Origin: Octopus sinensis
Taxonomy: Eukaryota
Assembly (NCBI RefSeq): GCF_006345805.1
Contig: NC_043007.1
Coordinates: 9,858,001 to 9,922,000, forward strand
DNA length: 64,000 bases
Direction: 5' to 3'
Numbering within the stretch: position 1 is the first letter of the stretch; the number at the start of each line of letters is the position of its first letter. This document shows, piece by piece, positions 10,101 through 58,443 of the stretch. The notes under the pieces are model-generated. The model searched no databases and was not told where the DNA came from. It worked only from the letters and a program-made list of their open reading frames with translations. Made by a program: the position numbers and the translations under genes.

Positions 10101-10306
10101 CTACAGAGTGTAGGTATGAGGAGACGATGTAATTCACCCTCTTTTTTTTCGGCCTACCCTCTTTATTTAGGTCATGAGGAAAGGTTGTGTAAGTTATTTC
10201 TTTATTGCCCACAAGGGGCTAAAAAAAGGGTTGTGTAAGTGACGTCGTGAACCAATAACGAACGATTGCCTTGGCTATGTCGTTAGAACGGTATTCATTC
10301 CCGCTG

Positions 10307-12618: not shown

Positions 12619-12814
12619 AACGAGTTGGGACAGAACCCAAAACCGCGTGGTTGCAAAGTGAGCTTTTTATACATACATACATACATACATACATACATAC
12701 ATACAACATACATACATACATACATACATACATACATGCATACATACATACATGCATGCAGACATACATACATACATACATACATACATACATACATACA
12801 TACATACATACATA

Positions 12815-14070
12815 ATGCAGGAAAAGCAATGAAAGATGACAACCGATGCAAACTTTGTGGAGTTAACACCGAAGATATCACCCACATAATAAGCAGTTGT
12901 ACGAAAATGTCATCATGGTATTATCTACCGATGAGACATGATGCTGTAGCAAGGACACTTTATAATGAAATCCATCGGAAAGATAACCCCGAGGAGAAAG
13001 AGAGAATACCAAACGAGTTCCCTATGGATACCGTATTTATTACAACGAGTGGCTTGTAAACGTATCTAACAACGAAAGCGAGTTAGATACGTTTACAAGC
13101 CACGAGTTGTAATAAATACGGTATCCATAGGGAATGAGTTTGGTATTTTATTTATTACACACGAATAAACGACCATATTTAACAAAACCATTCACCTTGA
13201 TATCGACAACAGTAGCCATCTTGTTGATAGATCTACCTGCACTGCAAGAGTATCGACGAGCAGACGAAATATGTTGTGATTTTTTGGGCAACAAAAATTG
13301 AATTACCACCAGAAATGTTTATATTTTATGTATATGACTAGTGATATCTGGTATAAAAAAGATAGTATGTTTGTTTAATTACATGGCTACATTCTACCTG
13401 CTCGTGAAAGTAATGAATGAAGTTTAGTTGTAACTTATAATGACAAAAGTAGTGCCGTCACCGTGACCTCGGGTCATCACCATGGATTGACCAATCAGAA
13501 GCAGCGCTCGCAGTATCTGACATATGTTAGATACCAAAAATATCTCAAAGTGTTCTCACTCACATGTGTGTAATAAAGAAATAAGAACCCACAATATGGT
13601 AGAAGCCACTCATAATAAAAAGGGGTACTGGTGGAATGTACCAGTCAAGACCTCAATAAAATGTAAGCACATTGATATAATGATTTGGGATAGAGAAGAG
13701 AAACTGTGCACAGTTGTGGAAATTACCTGCCTTGCTGATGTTAACATAAAACTGAGGATCAATGAAAAAGAGAATATGTTAGCTGATCTATTGAGAAATC
13801 TGCAGTTACTCTATCCAAATTACAAGTTCAGGCTTATACCTGTAATTATTGGGGCACTGGGATATGTAACACATTGCCTAAATACCAATGTTGAGAAACT
13901 AGGCTGCTCAAAACCAGAAAGGAGAATCAATTCGAAGACTACAGATCCAATCCATCACTGGAACTGTAAAAATACCTGAAACTTTCCAGAAGTTTATCAT
14001 TTGAATATATATGAGCATGTCTAGATATGTAACTATATGCATGAGAATACAAGCATGAAACAAAACATAC
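12815..14070 (+). mobile_element. R4/Dong-type (RLE) non-LTR 3' end, split by the 13002-13574 insertion
   Basis: CCHC knuckle CKLCGVNTEDITHIISSC and RHDAVA (12840-12960); RLE-like region WWNVPV..IDIMIWD..VVEITC..IPVIIGALG (13630-13865); removing the insert restores the frame EEKE-IRTHN. Confidence 0.85.
13002..13574. mobile_element. Non-autonomous 573-bp element with a terminal 66-bp-arm hairpin, flanked by an AAAGA direct repeat (possibly Crypton/tyrosine-recombinase type)
   Basis: Stem 13005-13070 pairs with 13082-13147; AAAGA at 12997-13001 and 13575-13579; precise interruption of the LINE reading frame. Confidence 0.75.
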
Positions 14071-14115
14071 AAATCTGCACATATATATATATACATATAT
14101 AATACATACATACAT

Positions 14116-14433
14116 AAACGGTAAACGTCGCCCATTTCAAGCCTAGCCAGGCTCATGGGCCTAGTTTCCCAGTTTCTGTAGTGTATGTGTTCCCCCCAGC
14201 TGGACGGAATGCCAGTCCATCGCAGCGTTACTCACGAAACATGAAGAGAGAATGAGAGAAAGTTGTGGAGAAAGAGTACAACAGGAGTCGCCACGCCCCC
14301 CACTGCCGGAGCCTAGTGGAGCTTTTAGGTGTTTTCGCTCACAAAACACACACAACGCCCGGTCTGGGAATCGAAACCGCGATCCTCCGACCGCGAGTCC
14401 GCTGCCTTAACCACTGGGCCATTGCGCCTCCAC
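14116..14433 (-). mobile_element. SINE-R head with alternative tail (R2 type)
   Basis: Head identical to SINE-R; tail ctgcgatggactggcattccgtccagctgg...aaactgggaaactaggcccatgagcc, related to 33420-33722. Confidence 0.8.
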
Positions 14434-16692: not shown

Positions 16693-16890
16693 AATAATAA
16701 TAATAATAATCCTTTCTTCTATAAGCACAAGCCCTGCATTTTATGGGAGAGGAACAGTAGATCGCATCGACGCCACTACTCAACTGGTATTTAATCTATT
16801 GACCCCGAAATGATGAAAGACAACGTCGACCTCGGTTGAAGTTGAACTCAGAACGTAAAAACTGACGAAATACCACTAAGCCTTTCGCCT

Positions 16891-19725
16891 GTAGAGTCTA
16901 TCTCGAACCGGTAGTGGCCCCGATAGCACTGCCAAGCCAAAGACATCTGGAAATTATCGATAATAGTCCCCGACCAAGAGTCCTCCGGAACTAACTAGTC
17001 AGTTCATCTTCATCAACGACCAGATATGTCGTCGCACTTTCCCGCAACTAGTTCTCTATAAATAGCTAAAGTGGAACATCCACCGATCCTGTTACCCGGC
17101 TTGTAGAAGACAGTGAGCGCCTGACTACATTCTAAGTGCCAGGCGTCCAGTCTTGGTCTATCCTTCACTCAGGACTGCAGTTCCGTAAAAGAGAAGAGTT
17201 GCGGAAACACATGCCGCACAAACGGATCCCACACACATTCACCATATAGAAATCATTGCAGGTGACGAAACCTGAGCGCATGTCTGCGCATCAAAAGCCA
17301 CAGCATGCCTAAGCCACCATACAGAGAGAGCTGACAAGATTGATCGCCTGATTACTGAAATACGTCCCTTCCACAAGAACATGAACAAGCAATAACTGAG
17401 GCAAGGCACGACGGCCAGACGATAAATGATAACGAAGGCGAGTAGGCATTTGCCACTTCTGCATGTCCTTTGAAGGACAGCTTCCTCTTAGACCATTTCT
17501 GGGTAAGACTGGCTACCTTGTTCGTCACCTCGTCTCACTTCTTAGACCAAACCAGACCCCGAGCACTTTTGACTGGTCCGTCAGTCCAGCGTCCGACGGC
17601 GCCATCTGACGGCTTCGACCTGCCTCTCCATGTTCCACGTCGCAAATTCACTGACTTCTCGTCATTGATTTTAGCCCTTGCAACCGACTCATATTCTTCC
17701 AGAATGGTGCCAACCGTCTGCACCTCGGAAGCGTCCGACACCATGACGTTGACGTCGTCTGCGTATGCATACACTGCTCTTCCGAGTCTCAGTTCGAAAG
17801 GAATGCCTTTCAATTGTTCCAAGTTGAACCCAGTTTTAGTCCCAGCCCTCTCTGTGATGTATCGCATAAGGTGGAGGTTGTCGTGGATAGGCCTATTCGG
17901 GATTGCGCACGTTTGTGCTTCCCTTACTAGACTACCAACGACAAGCGCCAACCTTTTCGCTGATACCTTGTCCAAAATCTTAAACTCTGTGTTTAGCAGA
18001 GTTATGGGCCGAAAATTCCTTAATATATGTCTCCACTGTCGACGTCCTTCTTCAGCAGTGTAACCACACTACGACTAACAGCACTGGGAATTCTCCCATT
18101 CTGTTTCCAGTTGCGGTAAACATATACCAAGCTATCGCCAAACAAATCTGACATGAATACATAGAATTCGTAGAGCAGACAATCTAAACCTGGCGATTTG
18201 CAACTTGTGCAATATCTCACTGCCTTTCGTATTTCAGTGGCCATTATCGGCTTTTCGCAGAACTTCGCATCCGCTGTCGACAGTCGTGCCAGGCTACCCA
18301 GGTACGAACTAAAGTCCGCTACCTTCGTTGATCCACCACCCCCTCCAAATGGTTACGCGAAGTGATGCTGGAAAGCCGCACACATCTGCTCAGAACCATG
18401 CAACACGCGTCCATCCCGATCCATCAAAGATCCGATCCTGGTTTTGTTGCCACGTCGCCTCTCCACCGTTCGAACCCATCGGACGGCTTTAGTTCCTACA
18501 TGTTTTAGCGCACGGGCCTTAGCTCTGACAACGCAGCCTTCGTGTTTCACCTCAAAGAAATAGTCAAAAGCCATTCTCGCCGCTACCATATCAGTCGCAA
18601 TGCATTTACTAATCGCCTCTTCGAGTTTGCTAACTAGTTCTCCCTTTAATCTGTTTCTTTCTATTACTAACTTTTTGCTAAACTTTATTGATTCTGCTCT
18701 AATCACTTTCTTCAGGGTTATCCATCATCGGTTGTTAACGATTGCTCCCGTCAACTGCCGCTTAATTAGTGTCGCTAATCTGGTCCCTGTAGTCTTTGCG
18801 TGCAGGAAAGGGCACAATCAACTTCCAGTAACCGGATCCTCGTCTACGCGTCCTATCTAAATCGACCGTGCAGATCATAAATTTGTGGTCTGTGTAGCCC
18901 GCCAATTTGAATTGTGAACACCCTATAATAACCTTATCCGCTGACCTAACAAATACTTTACCTAGATACGATCTGGATGACCCATTCTGATTGCTCCATG
19001 TTCACAATGGCACATCAGGTATATCCAGTCGATACCTGCCGGAAAGCTGGAGGATTCTGAGCAGGTTTTCGAGGCTTTTACACCCCACTTCTTCTATATA
19101 CTAAACCCACACAGTTCTTCCACGCATCCAAAATACCATTCCAGTCCCTCATTAGTACTAAAGTGCGAGATGTTCCCAGGAATGTTTCTTGACGCCAGAA
19201 GAAATCTGGCCTCCCAGCCCCTGTCGGAGCATACACGGCCACCAATCTAAAGGTACTACCTTCACCGCCATTCACATCTAGGACCATCAACCTACCGCCC
19301 GGGTCTAAGAAGAGTGTTCTTACTTTGAGGCCAAAGCCTTTTCGGAGTAACACTGCTGCACCGCCGCCCGCTCTCGACAGACCCCAAGATGAAAATACTT
19401 CGTAGTCTTCAAAAATGGTTGCAAGAGCATATTTCCCGGTAATTCTCATCTCGCTAATTGCTATCGCTTCTAAATTTAAGGACCTGAGATCGTTGAGCAG
19501 GTGACCCTGTTTCCTAGCCGAATCCAGACCTCGAACATTTACACAGCCAACTCTAAGTGTAGCCATTTAGCTTAGAGGAAATAAAATGGAATTACACACC
19601 TTGGTCTCCAGGGATGACAATTGACAGTCTTCATTTTGTTCGAGGGGGTAATGAGGAAGAGTTTTTCTAGGTAGTGTTTCTTTTTCTTTTTTCTTTTTTG
19701 GTGGGAGGGGGATAACTTACTGAAC
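16891..19725 (-). pseudogene. Tx1/L1-clade LINE ORF2 relic (APE endonuclease, RT, zf-RVT start), frameshifted and internally deleted
   Basis: MATLRVGCVNVRGL..LVAVYAP (APE, 19078-19566); YTDHKF..GYWKL; KSPGLDCLLYEFY (about 18190); YAYADDV (about 17760); LAWQCYRG..LPVRDRL (about 16920); the DxxKAFD and QGxPLSP segments are missing near 17825. Confidence 0.9.
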
Positions 19726-19779: not shown

Positions 19780-19879
19780 NNNNNNNNNNNNNNNNNNNNN
19801 NNNNNNNNNNNNNNNNNNNNNNNNNNNNNNNNNNNNNNNNNNNNNNNNNNNNNNNNNNNNNNNNNNNNNNNNNNNNNNN
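19780..19879. other. Assembly gap (100 N)
   Basis: Run of N. Confidence 1.
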
Positions 19880-21684: not shown

Positions 21685-21918
21685 AAGGCGGCAAGCTAGC
21701 AGAAACGTTAGAACGTCGGGCGAAATGCTTAGCAGTATTTCGTCTGCCGTTACGTTGTGAGTTCAAATTCCGCCGAGGTCGACTTTACCTTTCATCCTTT
21801 CGGGGGCGATAAATTAAGTACCATTTACGCACTGGGGTCAATGTAATCGACTTAATACCTATATCTGTCCTTGTTTGTCCCCTCTATGTTTTGCCCCTTG
21901 TGAGTAATAAAGAAACAG
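21685..21918 (+). mobile_element. SINE-A1
   Basis: aaggcggcaagctagcagaaacgttag head to gtaataaagaaac tail, followed by aggtattt. Confidence 0.88.
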
Positions 21919-22438
21919 GTATTTAAAAAAATAAGTGGCACTTTTTTTTTTAGATAAGAGGGTAAGGTTTCAAAGTGTTCTAGTTGCTATTTCTTGCATA
22001 TTAAGCGGCTGTGTTCATGTTGCTAATGTTGTTGTTGTTGTTGTTGTTAAGCACAAGACGGGTAAGGGTGATTAGATGATGGTATAGGGCTTAGGGGCGG
22101 GAGACCCCAGACTTTGAAAAAAAAAACTTTGGTTGTCTTGTTGTAGTCGAGGGCTCTTCGTTGACGCCCGACACCACTGGGAGGTGGCCCTCGAAGTCGC
22201 TGGAAATGGAGATCTCCAGGTCCAAATTCTTGGACGGCTGTTGTTGCTGCTGCTTTTGTTGTTGTTCTTGTGTAGCCCCCCAGATCAGCCTAAATGCAAC
22301 ACAGTAACAGCCTATACAGTCGTATGGCAAACCGAATGTTGATAGTCGGCCAAATTGTTCCATTCTACCGGTTATATCTCTTTACCAGCAGGAGAGCATA
22401 CTGTACACTCAAACATGCACTGGTAAATTGCATAGAGT

Positions 22439-23589: not shown

Positions 23590-23886
23590 AGGCGGCGAGC
23601 TGGCAGAAATTAAGACGGCGAGCTGGCAGAAAAAGGCGGCGAGCTGGCAGAAATAAGGCGACGAGCTGGCAGAATCGTTAGCACGTCGGGTGAAATGCGT
23701 AGCCGTATTTCGTCTGCCGTTACGTTCTGAGTTCAAATTCCGCCGAGGTCGGCTTTGACTTTCATCCTTTCGGGGTCGATAAATTAAGTACCAGTTACGC
23801 ACTGGGGTCGATGTAATCGACTTAATACCATTGTCTGTCCTTATTTGTCCCCTCTATGTTTAGCCCCTTGTGGGTAATAAAGAAAT
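23590..23886 (+). mobile_element. SINE-A1 with four tandem copies of its first about 22 nt and an 11-bp TSD
   Basis: (aggcggcgagctggcagaa..)x4 at 23589-23673; TSD aggtaattgta at 23579-23589 and 23887-23897. Confidence 0.9.
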
Positions 23887-24199
23887 AGGTAATTGTAGTT
23901 TCAGTGGCAAGAGAGTTATACTGGAGCGACATCTTCAATCTACTTAAGCAGCGAGTTGGCAGAGCCGTTTGGTGTGTTGGATACAACAGTGCTTTGCAGT
24001 ATCTGTTCTGGCTTATAGCGATCTGTGTTCAAATCCCTATGAGGTCAATTTTACATTTTATTCTACCCTATCCATCATGATACTGATCATCAACCCTTGG
24101 ATATTACTGTTAAGAGTCTTAGGACACATAGGACCAGTTACCCGATTTCCATTGCGTAAAAGTAGCCGAGTCCACAATACTTCCTGATAATGATGATAG

Positions 24200-36094: not shown

Positions 36095-36252
36095 CTGTGT
36101 GGTAAGTAGCTTGTTTACCAACCACATGGTTCCGGGTTCAGTCCCACTGCGTGGCACCTTGGGCAAGTGTCTTCTACTATAGCCTCGGGCCGACCAAAGC
36201 CTTGTGAGTGGATTTGGTAGACGGAAACTGAAAGAAGCCTGTCGTATATATG

Positions 36253-36283
<31 letters not shown>

Positions 36284-36491
36284 ATGTTTGTGTGTCTGTG
36301 TTTGTCCCCCTAGCATTGCTTGACAACCGATGCTGGTGTGTTTATGTCCCCGTCACTTAGCGGTTCGGCAAAAGAGACCGATAGAATAAGTACTGGGCTT
36401 ACAAAAGAATAAGTCCCGGGGTCGAGTTGCTCGATTAAAGGCGGTGCTCCAGCATGGCCGCAGTCAAATGACTGAAACAAGTAAAGAGTAA
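36095..36491 (+). mobile_element. SINE-B, near full length, young
   Basis: Nearly identical to 54797-55212 and 62581-62960. Confidence 0.9.
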
Positions 36492-36911
36492 ATATAACAT
36501 ACGAGAAAAGAGATACGAAAAATATCCTTGCAAAATACAGACATTAACATTAATTTAAGTGTAAAGTTTTAATCTTGTACGCATAGGTTTCATGTGACGT
36601 CGTACAATCGTCAACAAGGAAGAGGAAGATGAAGGAATTATTAATACAGCGGCCATAATTATACATTCGTTTTGGGTCGTTCCATATTGCAATATGGCGT
36701 GGGATGTTATTCTGTCATCTTTCGAATTCATTAACCTGCGAAGAATTATTTTTGAAAAAGATTTTGTTTCTTATCCCTACAAACAGTAAATATAAAACTA
36801 CTCTACTTACCAGGTTCAGTATATGTATATTGATATATACATGATACTCTATTGAGTGTAGGAACATGCTAAAAATATTTCTTAATATGTCTCTTAATAA
36901 AATATTATCTA

Positions 36912-45894: not shown

Positions 45895-46770
45895 TAATCC
45901 TTTCTTCTGTAGGCAGAAGGCCTGAAATTTAGAGGGAAAGATTGAGTCGATTATATCGACCCCAGTACTCAACTGATACTTAATTTATCGACCCCCGAAA
46001 GGATGATAGGCAAAGTCGACCTCGGCGGAATTTGAACTCAGAACGTAGCGGCAGACGAAATACCTATTTCTTTATTACCCACAAGGGGCTAAACACAGAG
46101 GGGACAAACAAGGACAGACAAACGGATTAAGTCGATTACATCGACCCCAGTGCGTAACTGGTACTTAATTTATCGACCCCGAAAGGATGATAGGCAAAGT
46201 CGACCTCGGCGGAATTTGAACTCAGAACGTAGCGGCAGACGAAATACCGCTAAGCATTTCGCCCGGCGTGTTAACGTTTCTGCCAGCTTGCCGCCTAAAT
46301 AATTATAATAATCCTTTCTACTACAGGTACAAGGCCTGGAATTTGTGGGGGGGGTGGTTAGTTGATCACATCGACCCCAGTACTCAACTGGTACTTAATT
46401 TATCAACCCCGAAAGGTTGATAGGCAAAGAGGACCTCGGCGGAATTTGCACTCAAAACATAGCGACGGGACGAAATACCGTTAAGCATTTCATCCAGCGA
46501 GCTAACGGCTTTGCCAGCGCGCTGCTTTAATAATAATAATAATAATAATAATAATGATTTTAAATTTTGCCACAAAGGCAGCAATTTGGGGGTGTATGAG
46601 TCGATTTTATCGCACCCAGTGTTCAACTGGTACTTATTTTATCGACTTCGAAAGAATGAAAGGCAATGTCGACCTCGGTGGAATTTGAACTCAGAACGTA
46701 GCGACGAGCGAAATACCGCAAAGCATTTCGTCCAGCGCGCTAACAATCCAGCCAGCTCGCTGCCTTAAAT
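45895..46770 (-). mobile_element. SINE-A cluster: A1-into-A2 concatemer (45895-46296) plus two further copies
   Basis: Junction gacgaaatacc|tatttctttattaccc at about 46064; three heads and four bodies visible. Confidence 0.85.
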
Positions 46771-55890: not shown

Positions 55891-55956
55891 TATACATATA
55901 TATATGAATGTGTGTGTATTTGCATCTTTGTTTTTGCCACCACGACCACCACTACC

Positions 55957-56189
55957 TATTTCTTTATTACCCACAAGGGGCTAAACATAGAGGGGACAAT
56001 CAAGGACAGACATAGGTATTAAGTCGATTACATCGACCCCAGTGCGTAACTGGTTCTTAATTTTTCGACCCCGAAAGGATGAAAGGCAAAGTCGACCTCG
56101 GCGGAATTTGAACTCAGAACGTTACAGCAGACGAAATACGGCTACGCATTTCGCCCGGCGTGCTAACGATTCTGCCAGCTCGCCGCCTT
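55957..56189 (-). mobile_element. SINE-A1 with 13-bp TSD
   Basis: gaccaccactacc at 55944-55956 and 56190-56202. Confidence 0.92.
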
Positions 56190-58172: not shown

Positions 58173-58443
58173 ATACCCTTCCCCAACCCCTAACCCTAAC
58201 CCTAACTAACCCTAACTCTAACCCTAAATCTAAAATAGATTGAAATGCAGTAGATCGATACTAGGGCCATAATTATGGGTGACATTTTCATTTGACACCG
58301 CTAGAAAAAAATCCCATTTTCCGTAGCGGTGTCGTATGAAATTGCCACCCATAATTATAACCCTAGTATCGATCTATTGCATTTCAATCTATTTTAGATT
58401 TAGGGTTAGGGTTAGAGTTAGGGTTAGGGTGGGGGAAGGGTAT
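58173..58443. mobile_element. 271-bp fold-back (MITE-like) element with subterminal telomeric repeats
   Basis: Arms 58173-58303 and 58324-58443 are imperfect reverse complements; (CCCTAA)n on the left, (TTAGGG)n on the right. Confidence 0.8.

What the first reader, a model, noticed from the sequence alone, without database searches (positions are those of the whole stretch)
12997..13579. Hairpin element whose joined ends would extend its own stem (circle-junction complementarity)
Seen in sequence: a 573-bp insert precisely interrupts an R4/Dong ORF and is bounded by a 5-bp direct repeat (AAAGA). It starts with a 66-bp stem (13005-13070 with 13082-13147) whose mismatches are two tandem GA/AG pairs, one with an adjacent G-T, and its loop contains C(GAAA)G. 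The 12 nt just after the stem (TTTATTACACAC, 13151-13162) are the perfect complement of the far end (GTGTGTAATAAA, 13566-13577). Joining the ends gives GTGTGTAATAAA-gagag-AATACCAAAC, complementary to the internal GTTTGGTATT-tta-TTTATTACACAC. Established: tyrosine-recombinase elements (Crypton, DIRS) move through circles, Cryptons have short terminal direct repeats, and DIRS have an internal region complementary to the joined ends. Inference: this is a non-autonomous element mobilised through a circular or single-stranded hairpin intermediate. It also carries a CCAAT box (13491) and a YY1-like GCCATCTT (13215).
Basis: partly seen in the sequence, partly recalled or inferred. Interest (0 to 1): 0.72.

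Follow-up and report, generated by a model that had tools for sequence, protein, structure and literature searches.

The report
Hairpin-headed retroposon inserted in octopus LINE
A young 573-bp insert in an octopus retrotransposon copy ends in the same 3' tail as the genome's abundant SINE, so it was most likely pasted in by a LINE reverse transcriptase rather than through a recombinase circle; its strand-specific 68-bp hairpin head is unusual.

Summary
A 573-bp insert (13002-13574) interrupts an R4/Dong-like ORF precisely and is flanked by AAAGA. Two paralogous empty sites carry only one AAAGA. The insert starts with a 66-68 bp hairpin whose only non-Watson-Crick pairs are two tandem G.A/A.G steps and one G.T.

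The tyrosine-recombinase/circle reading is not supported. The insert's last 10 nt plus the target read TGTGTGTAATAAAGAAATA. This is the 3' tail of the window's abundant 235-bp tRNA-derived SINE (12 copies here, 0.03 matches expected by chance). An APE+RT LINE at 16700-19566(-) shares that SINE's 3' region. The native R4 target already read AAAGAAATAAG, which is 10/11 identical to the tail end and in register.

Best explanation (about 0.55): a + strand, LINE-dependent retroposon, or a one-off chimeric retrocopy, integrated by target-primed reverse transcription on tail/target microhomology.

Main rival (about 0.12): a minus-strand Helentron/Helitron2 non-autonomous element. Its asymmetric-TIR-plus-palindrome anatomy fits, but the 5-bp duplication and the SINE tail do not.

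The "12-nt end complement" is only 9 nt within the element proper. No second copy was found in about 170 kb of cephalopod DNA, so family status is untested.

The parts
12815..13001 (+). Left part of the interrupted, 5'-truncated R4/Dong-like ORF (zinc knuckle region); this is the target DNA.
   Evidence: Translation and frame restoration; homologues; weak zf-RVT hit.
12997..13001 (.). Upstream copy of AAAGA (target-site duplication or microhomology).
   Evidence: The paralogous empty sites have one copy only.
13002..13574 (+). The inserted element, 573 bp, non-coding.
   Evidence: Six-frame peptide search found no homologue.
13003..13149 (+). 5' hairpin: 66 bp by DNA complementarity (13005-13070 with 13082-13147), 68 bp as RNA.
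13014..13017 (+). CGAG opposite TGAG (13135-13138): tandem G.A/A.G plus a G.T.
13046..13049 (+). CGAG opposite CGAG (13103-13106): tandem G.A/A.G.
13071..13081 (+). Apical loop AACGAAAGCGA with C(GAAA)G. A fifth same-strand YGAG starts at 13079.
13151..13162 (+). 'Anti-tail' TTTATTACACAC, complementary to the 3' end, 3 nt after the hairpin.
   Evidence: I3. It pairs with the tail in the RNA MFE and centroid structures. Significance is tempered.
13163..13561 (+). Body with no detectable homology. Contains GCCATCTT (13215) and CCAAT (13491).
13562..13574 (+). Element-proper part of the 3' tail (CATGTGTGTAAT); matches the SINE tail CTTGTGGGTAAT.
13575..13579 (.). Downstream copy of AAAGA.
13580..14082 (+). 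Right part of the R4/Dong-like copy. Its first bases AATAAG continue the similarity to the SINE tail.
23655..23894 (+). Reference copy of the 235-bp tRNA-derived SINE that carries the same 3' tail (one of 12 tail-bearing copies in the window).
16700..19566 (-). APE+RT LINE copy. Its 3' UTR is about 80% identical to the SINE 3' part and ends in a related tail plus (ATT)n. It is the likely source family of the retrotransposition machinery.
10197..10223 (-). 27-nt tail-only SINE insertion with a 15-16 bp target-site duplication. It shows that this tail is used in target-primed reverse transcription.

Best explanation
The insert is a + strand, non-autonomous retroposed sequence that uses the 3' tail of the window's SINE/LINE system.

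Inferred mechanism:
1. An RNA ending in ...CAUGUGUGUAAUAAAGAAAUAGG was used as template by the reverse transcriptase of an APE-type LINE related to the copy at 16700-19566(-).
2. The nicked bottom strand of an R4/Dong copy, whose top strand natively read AAAGAAATAAG, annealed to the end of that tail and primed cDNA synthesis (target-primed reverse transcription).
3. A top-strand nick 5 nt away left AAAGA on both sides.

The RNA begins, within 1-3 nt, at the base of a 68-bp hairpin punctuated by sheared tandem G.A pairs. A 9-12 nt anti-tail directly after the hairpin can pair with the tail, so the two RNA ends sit side by side.

I infer that the hairpin defines and protects the 5' end and that the clamp keeps template ends together. 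This part is inference only.

Whether this is a multicopy family (a SINE-like element with a non-tRNA head, or the processed 3' part of a LINE) or a one-off chimeric retrocopy could not be tested.
For: 1. The 19-mer spanning the 3' junction (13565-13583) matches TGTGNGTAATAAAGAAATA with 0 mismatches. The other 12 matches in the window are all 3' ends of the tRNA-SINE. Expected by chance: 0.03.
2. The empty-site paralogue in O. bimaculoides reads GACAAAGAAATAAGAACC. The target therefore natively carried AAAGAAATAAG, 10/11 identical to the SINE tail end AAAGAAATAGG and in register with the element's TGTGTGTAAT.
3. One AAAGA in the empty sites and two in the filled site means a 5-bp duplication. 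The chance of a 5-nt identity is about 0.0015.
4. The same tail demonstrably works in TPRT here. SINE copies have 12-16 bp TSDs that start with tail-like GTATT. A 27-nt tail-only copy has a 15-bp TSD.
5. A LINE with APE and RT shares the SINE 3' region and a related tail.
6. Strand asymmetry favours the + strand. There are five YGAG on + and none on -. All stem mismatches are Y-GA-R tandem G.A, a G.U wobble and a GNRA loop. RNA free energy is -105.8 (+) versus -97.5 (-) kcal/mol.
7. The insert is young. There is at most one mutation-like change in 132 stem nucleotides, against 12-13 scattered mismatches in two control foldbacks.
Against: - No second copy was found in the window or in about 106 kb of other cephalopod loci, in the JGI metagenome contigs or in the viral contigs.
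- Homology to the SINE is limited to about 20 nt. The rest is not significant.
- The head has no tRNA, 7SL or 5S similarity and matches no Rfam family.
- TTTT runs (13146-13149, 13281-13286) argue against a full-length pol III transcript.
- The 5-bp TSD is shorter than the 12-16 bp seen for the SINE.
- The anti-tail next to the hairpin has no established role in TPRT. It reproduces the Helentron asymmetric-TIR anatomy on the other strand.
Confidence: 0.55

Rival explanations
1. Minus-strand non-autonomous Helentron/Helitron2 (HLE2, HINE-like) element. The left terminal sequence would be TCTTTATTACACAC. Its complement GTGTGTAATAAATA lies subterminally and is followed directly by the 3' palindrome and a short tail. 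The element would be moved as single-stranded DNA by a Rep/helicase and inserted between two T residues without duplication.
For: [quoted passage not shown]
- The minus strand of the insert has exactly this order.
- Three of the six possible junction registers are T|T.
- Helitrons are active in O. vulgaris (PMC13282606).
- Joined-end circles are documented for this group (PMC5148889).
Against: - The empty sites show a 5-nt redundancy, TCTTT including a C, which is not just a T run. Chance of this is about 0.0015. Helentrons cause no target modification.
- The junction-spanning identity to the SINE tail, and the tail-like native target, would both have to be coincidence.
- On the transferred (minus) strand the stem mismatches are destabilising C.T/T.C.
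- The stem is 66 bp, against 5-10 bp or otherwise 'short' palindromes in described HINEs.
- There is no microsatellite or central repeat.
- No partner was examined.
Confidence: 0.12
2. Not a discrete element. It is a one-off filler: a 573-bp piece of another locus copied into a break in the R4/Dong copy by homology-templated repair. The repair would have been anchored on the tail-like AAAGAAATA at the right junction and on AAAGA/GAGA microhomology at the left junction.
For: - Only one copy was seen.
- Both junctions show microhomology.
- The right end coincides with a retroposon tail that is abundant in the genome.
Against: - The left boundary falls 1-3 nt from the base of a 68-bp hairpin, which is unlikely for an arbitrary fragment.
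- The stem is pristine and has selected-looking G.A steps.
- TPRT explains the same junctions with fewer assumptions.
Confidence: 0.1
3. One reading: a non-autonomous Crypton/DIRS-like element that excises as a circle and integrates by tyrosine-recombinase crossover within a short core (AAAGA) shared by the circle junction and the target.
For: - A 5-bp direct repeat flanks the element without TIRs or LTRs.
- The ends can be aligned side by side on an internal strand.
Against: - There are no ITRs or split direct repeats.
- The element-proper end complement is only 9 nt.
- The model gives no reason for the end plus target to reconstitute the SINE/LINE tail.
- No recombinase partner was examined.
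Confidence: 0.04

Closest known systems
SINE/LINE pairs that share a 3' tail (here the window's 235-bp tRNA-derived SINE and its APE+RT LINE; general principle in PMC7245038 and PMC5786205, seen)
   Same: The 3' end is the LINE/SINE tail. Integration is at a tail-like target with a short duplication. It is non-coding, short and + strand specific.
   Different: The head is a 68-bp G.A-punctuated hairpin, not a tRNA, 7SL or 5S sequence. Only about 20 nt are shared with the SINE. An anti-tail pairs with the tail. Copy number is unknown.
Helentron/Helitron2 non-autonomous elements (HINE, DINE-1, Cg_HINE)
   Same: On the minus strand it shows a terminal sequence, its complement placed subterminally, then a palindrome near the 3' end. 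The target is T-rich.
   Different: A 5-bp duplication is present. The palindrome is about 6-10 times longer. There is no microsatellite or central repeat. The terminus is identical to a retroposon tail.
DIRS internal complementary region
   Same: An internal stretch is complementary to the two ends placed side by side.
   Different: There are no inverted terminal or split direct repeats. Most of the 'ICR' is simply one arm of a hairpin. A target duplication is present.
Chimeric retrocopies made by LINE reverse transcriptase template switching (U6/L1-type; from my own knowledge)
   Same: A short LINE/SINE 3' end is fused to an unrelated RNA copied to its 5' end, flanked by a TSD.
   Different: The switch would have to occur after only about 10-20 nt. 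The copied RNA is unidentified.

Membership tests
LINE-dependent retroposon (SINE-like) | 3' tail shared with a LINE/SINE of the same genome | tested here: met
   junction 19-mer, 0 mismatches, 0.03 expected; SINE and LINE tails.
LINE-dependent retroposon (SINE-like) | Target-site duplication created on insertion, with tail/target microhomology | tested here: met
   The empty sites carry one AAAGA and natively read AAAGAAATAAG.
LINE-dependent retroposon (SINE-like) | Head derived from a pol III small RNA (tRNA, 7SL, 5S) | tested here: not met
   ARAGORN found 0 genes. Rfam gave only sub-threshold generic miRNA-hairpin hits.
LINE-dependent retroposon (SINE-like) | Many dispersed copies with 5' truncations and variable TSD lengths | tested here: inconclusive
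   No second copy was found in about 170 kb or in the other collections. The source genome is not searchable here.
Helentron/Helitron2 (HLE2) non-autonomous element | 11-18 nt inverted repeats, with the right one subterminal and followed by a stem-loop | tested here: met
   (I2, I3), read on the minus strand. Definition.
Helentron/Helitron2 (HLE2) non-autonomous element | Insertion between T and T with no target-site modification | tested here: not met
   A T|T register is possible, but the filled site has 5 nt (TCTTT) more than element plus empty site.
Helentron/Helitron2 (HLE2) non-autonomous element | Autonomous Rep/helicase partner with the same termini | not testable with these tools
   No eukaryotic genome search is available. 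No Rep/helicase was seen among the window ORFs that were scanned.
DIRS | Inverted terminal repeats or split direct repeats plus an ICR | tested here: not met
   The ends GAGAATACC... and ...GTGTGTAAT are not repeats of each other. No long direct repeats were found.
Crypton | Tyrosine recombinase gene in an autonomous copy; short direct repeats at the ends; no TIR or LTR | tested here: inconclusive
   The direct repeat and the lack of TIR/LTR are met. A recombinase partner is not testable. The tail identity is unexplained by this family.
MITE / TIR DNA transposon | Inverted repeats at both termini | tested here: not met
   The only end-related inverted repeat is asymmetric.
Solo LTR / TRIM | TG...CA termini or terminal direct repeats with a 4-6 bp TSD | tested here: not met
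   The termini are GA...AT. There are no terminal direct repeats.

The most novel reading that the evidence does not exclude
This could be a so far undescribed kind of LINE-dependent retroposon whose head is not a small-RNA gene. Instead the head is a long hairpin punctuated by sheared G.A pairs, followed by an 'anti-tail' that clamps the RNA's 3' tail next to its 5' end. The clamp could let the reverse transcriptase pass from the 5' end of one template to the 3' end of the next (multimeric or circle-like cDNA).
Probability: 0.1. Interest if true: 0.7.

Novelty: new variant of a known kind. Interest (0 to 1): 0.35.

Why it matters
If this is a multicopy family, it would add a SINE-like element with a structured non-tRNA head to the very active octopus retroelement repertoire. 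RTE and Dong/R4 LINEs are reported as active in octopus brain (cited in PMC13282606). It would also give a clean natural example of tail/target microhomology steering integration. The case is a useful warning as well. The anatomy of one inverted repeat terminal, the other subterminal and next to a palindrome, which is used to call Helentrons automatically, can be produced by a sequence whose junctions say 'reverse transcription'. If it is a single chimeric retrocopy, it is ordinary.

Tried and rejected
Searches for further copies:
1. BLASTN in the window and eight other cephalopod or related loci: none.
2. A six-frame peptide concatenate against 5.8 billion proteins: nothing at E<=10.
3. Viral contigs pattern scan: nothing.
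4. JGI metagenomes by back-translated peptides: nothing.
5. JGI metagenomes by an exact 22-mer: one hit, L009. It is a GC-rich bacterial-type contig sharing only 22-25 nt, so it is a chance match.
6. GTDB genomes: nothing.

Hypotheses tested and dropped:
- Known RNA family or ribozyme: rejected.
- tRNA-derived head: rejected.
- Internally deleted derivative of the local LINE: that LINE's 5' UTR has no hairpin, and its 3' UTR shares only the tail.
- Extended homology to the SINE beyond the tail: not significant.
- An anti-tail in the SINE or the LINE: none in the SINE; the duplex-energy test was uninformative.
- Hairpin made by snap-back synthesis at insertion: rejected, because a copied arm would be perfectly complementary, whereas both arms carry GA in the same orientation.
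- Hairpin as a separate foldback MITE: no TSD, and it sits 3 nt from the insert's end. Two real foldbacks served as controls.
- Bacterial promoter/terminator scan: irrelevant here.

Full report
**What is there**

The arms 13005-13070 and 13082-13147 form a 66-nt inverted repeat that is 92% complementary, with an 11-nt loop. Folded as RNA, the + strand stem grows to 68 bp (13003-13149), with a z-score of about -21.

The only non-Watson-Crick pairs are two tandem G.A/A.G steps (13015-16/13136-37 and 13047-48/13104-05) and one G.T next to the first step. Two ordinary foldback elements used as controls (window 58206-58421 and L002 16754-17012) carry 12-13 scattered mismatches.

Five (C/T)GAG motifs lie on the + strand of the hairpin and none lies on the minus strand. 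As RNA the + strand is 8.3 kcal/mol more stable. A palindrome that decayed at random, or an arm copied at insertion, would not keep GA in the same orientation in both arms. The stem is therefore shaped for a single-stranded + strand form. It has suffered at most one mutation (the CpG-type C-to-T giving TGAG), so the insertion is young.

**The insertion is precise**

Removing 578 bp (573 plus one AAAGA) restores a continuous frame. That frame aligns without a gap across the junction to retrotransposon proteins, among them Octopus bimaculoides LOC106878562 and an O. vulgaris protein. The host is therefore an octopus.

The DNA of a paralogous copy in O. bimaculoides reads CCCCAAGGACAAAGAAATAAGAACCCGC at the site. 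A second paralogue from an ENA assembly agrees. The target therefore had one AAAGA and the filled site has two.

**What the ends say**

The decisive result came from the flank, not the hairpin. The window contains at least 12 copies of a 235-bp tRNA-derived SINE. Its 3' end is ...CCCTTGTGGGTAATAAAGAAATAGGTATT.

The pattern TGTGNGTAATAAAGAAATA (up to 2 mismatches) hits 13 places in the window. Twelve are SINE 3' ends. The thirteenth, with no mismatch, is 13565-13583: the insert's last 10 nt, the downstream AAAGA, and 4 nt of flank. Only 0.03 hits are expected by chance.

The empty-site paralogue shows that AAAGAAATAAG is native R4/Dong sequence. Two independent things therefore resemble one tail, in register:
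- the element's own end, TGTGTGTAAT versus TGTGGGTAAT;
- the target, AAAGAAATAAG versus AAAGAAATAGG.

This is what target-primed reverse transcription produces when the nicked target anneals to the end of the template's tail.

The same tail is visibly used this way in the window:
- SINE copies have 12-16 bp duplications that begin with tail-like GTATT.
- A 27-nt tail-only copy at 10197-10223(-) has a 15-bp duplication.
- A LINE with APE and RT domains at 16700-19566(-) carries a 3' UTR about 80% identical to the SINE's 3' part and a related tail followed by (ATT)n.

Beyond the roughly 20-nt tail, the insert has no significant similarity to the SINE.

**The rival anatomy**

Read on the minus strand, the insert has this order:
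- a terminal TCTTTATTACACAC;
- its complement placed subterminally;
- the big palindrome directly after it;
- a short 3' end.

This is the canonical Helentron/Helitron2 layout: 12-16 nt repeats, a stem-loop after the right repeat, and T|T insertion in T-rich DNA without duplication. I took this reading seriously, but three results speak against it.
- First, the 5-nt redundancy TCTTT is real and is not a simple T run. The chance of a 5-nt identity is about 0.0015.
- Second, the identity of end plus target to the SINE tail would be a coincidence.
- Third, the stem mismatches are destabilising C.T/T.C on the strand a Rep/helicase would transfer.

The 'inverted repeat' is also weaker than it looks. 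Within the element proper it is 9 nt, and a match of at least 9 nt is found in 2.2% of shuffles. The 12-nt and 16-nt versions borrow duplicated or flanking bases. The stem is also far longer than the short palindromes of described HINEs, and there is no microsatellite or central repeat.

DIRS-type repeats are absent. The 'internal region complementary to the joined ends' is one hairpin arm plus the 9-12 nt anti-tail. A short-core recombinase crossover could leave AAAGA on both sides, but it gives no reason for the tail match. I rate this model at about 0.04.

**How it most likely works**

Shown:
- It is a precise, young, non-coding 573-bp insertion.
- It created a 5-bp duplication.
- Its 3' end equals the local SINE/LINE tail.
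- The native target is tail-like.
- The hairpin is specific to the + strand.
- The predicted RNA fold is a 68-bp hairpin, one unpaired base, and then a 12-bp helix between the anti-tail and the tail that closes the body.

Inferred:
- A LINE reverse transcriptase copied a + strand RNA from a primer annealed on the tail.
- The RNA's 5' end lies at the hairpin base, either because transcription or processing starts there or because the hairpin stops 5' exonucleases.
- The clamp holds the template ends together.

Not settled: whether this is a family or a single chimeric retrocopy in which the enzyme switched templates after about 10-20 nt of SINE tail. No known RNA family matches. There is no tRNA-like head, and TTTT runs argue against pol III.

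**Limits**

No tool here searches a eukaryotic genome. I found no second copy in the window, in about 106 kb of other loci, in the protein collection via six-frame peptides, in the viral contigs, in the JGI metagenomes or in the GTDB genomes. The single metagenome hit is a chance 22-mer in a bacterial contig. Copy number, end conservation and TSD variability, which would decide between the models, remain untested.

**Verdict**

The recombinase/circle interpretation is not supported. The best explanation is LINE-mediated retroposition of a hairpin-headed RNA (0.55). The Helentron-type reading is the main rival (0.12). It is a moderately interesting variant of a known kind.

Noticed in passing
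window 12669-12814 and 14083-14116: The 5'-truncated R4/Dong-like copy that hosts the insert is flanked on both sides by (ATAC)n microsatellite. This suggests that this LINE inserts specifically into ACAT/ATAC repeats, as some site-specific non-LTR elements do.
   Followed up: partly
window, e.g. 23655-23894, 21685-21924, 46058-46296, 55934-56189: A 235-bp tRNA-derived SINE is very abundant, with at least 12 tail-bearing copies in 64 kb. Several copies form tail-to-head dimers in which ...AAATAGGTATTTCGTCTGCC joins the tail to an internal site of the next unit.
   Followed up: partly
window 16700-19566 (-): An APE+RT LINE copy has a 3' UTR homologous to the SINE and ends in (ATT)n. Three SINE copies sit directly behind such tails, so new insertions seem to home to existing tails. 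The LINE clade was not determined.
   Followed up: partly
window 58176-58441: A foldback MITE of about 266 bp has TA flanks. Its long inverted arms begin with telomere-like CCCTAA/TTAGGG repeats.
   Followed up: no
window 36095-36508 and about 10 other places: A second tRNA-derived SINE family of about 400 bp has an internal (TA)n/(TG)n tract and a different tail...GAAACAAGTAAAGAGTAAA.
   Followed up: no
window 19780-19879: A 100-N assembly gap lies just upstream of the LINE copy, next to a long CT-rich low-complexity tract.
   Followed up: no
L009 567-591: A bacterial-type metagenome contig shares an exact 22-mer (24/25 nt) with the hairpin arm. This is a chance match and shows that 22-mers are not specific at this database size.
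   Followed up: yes
window 13440-13500: The body of the insert holds two short palindromes (GTCACCGTGAC and TGACCTCGGGTCA) just upstream of the CCAAT box. They may be captured promoter-like sequence. This was not tested.
   Followed up: no
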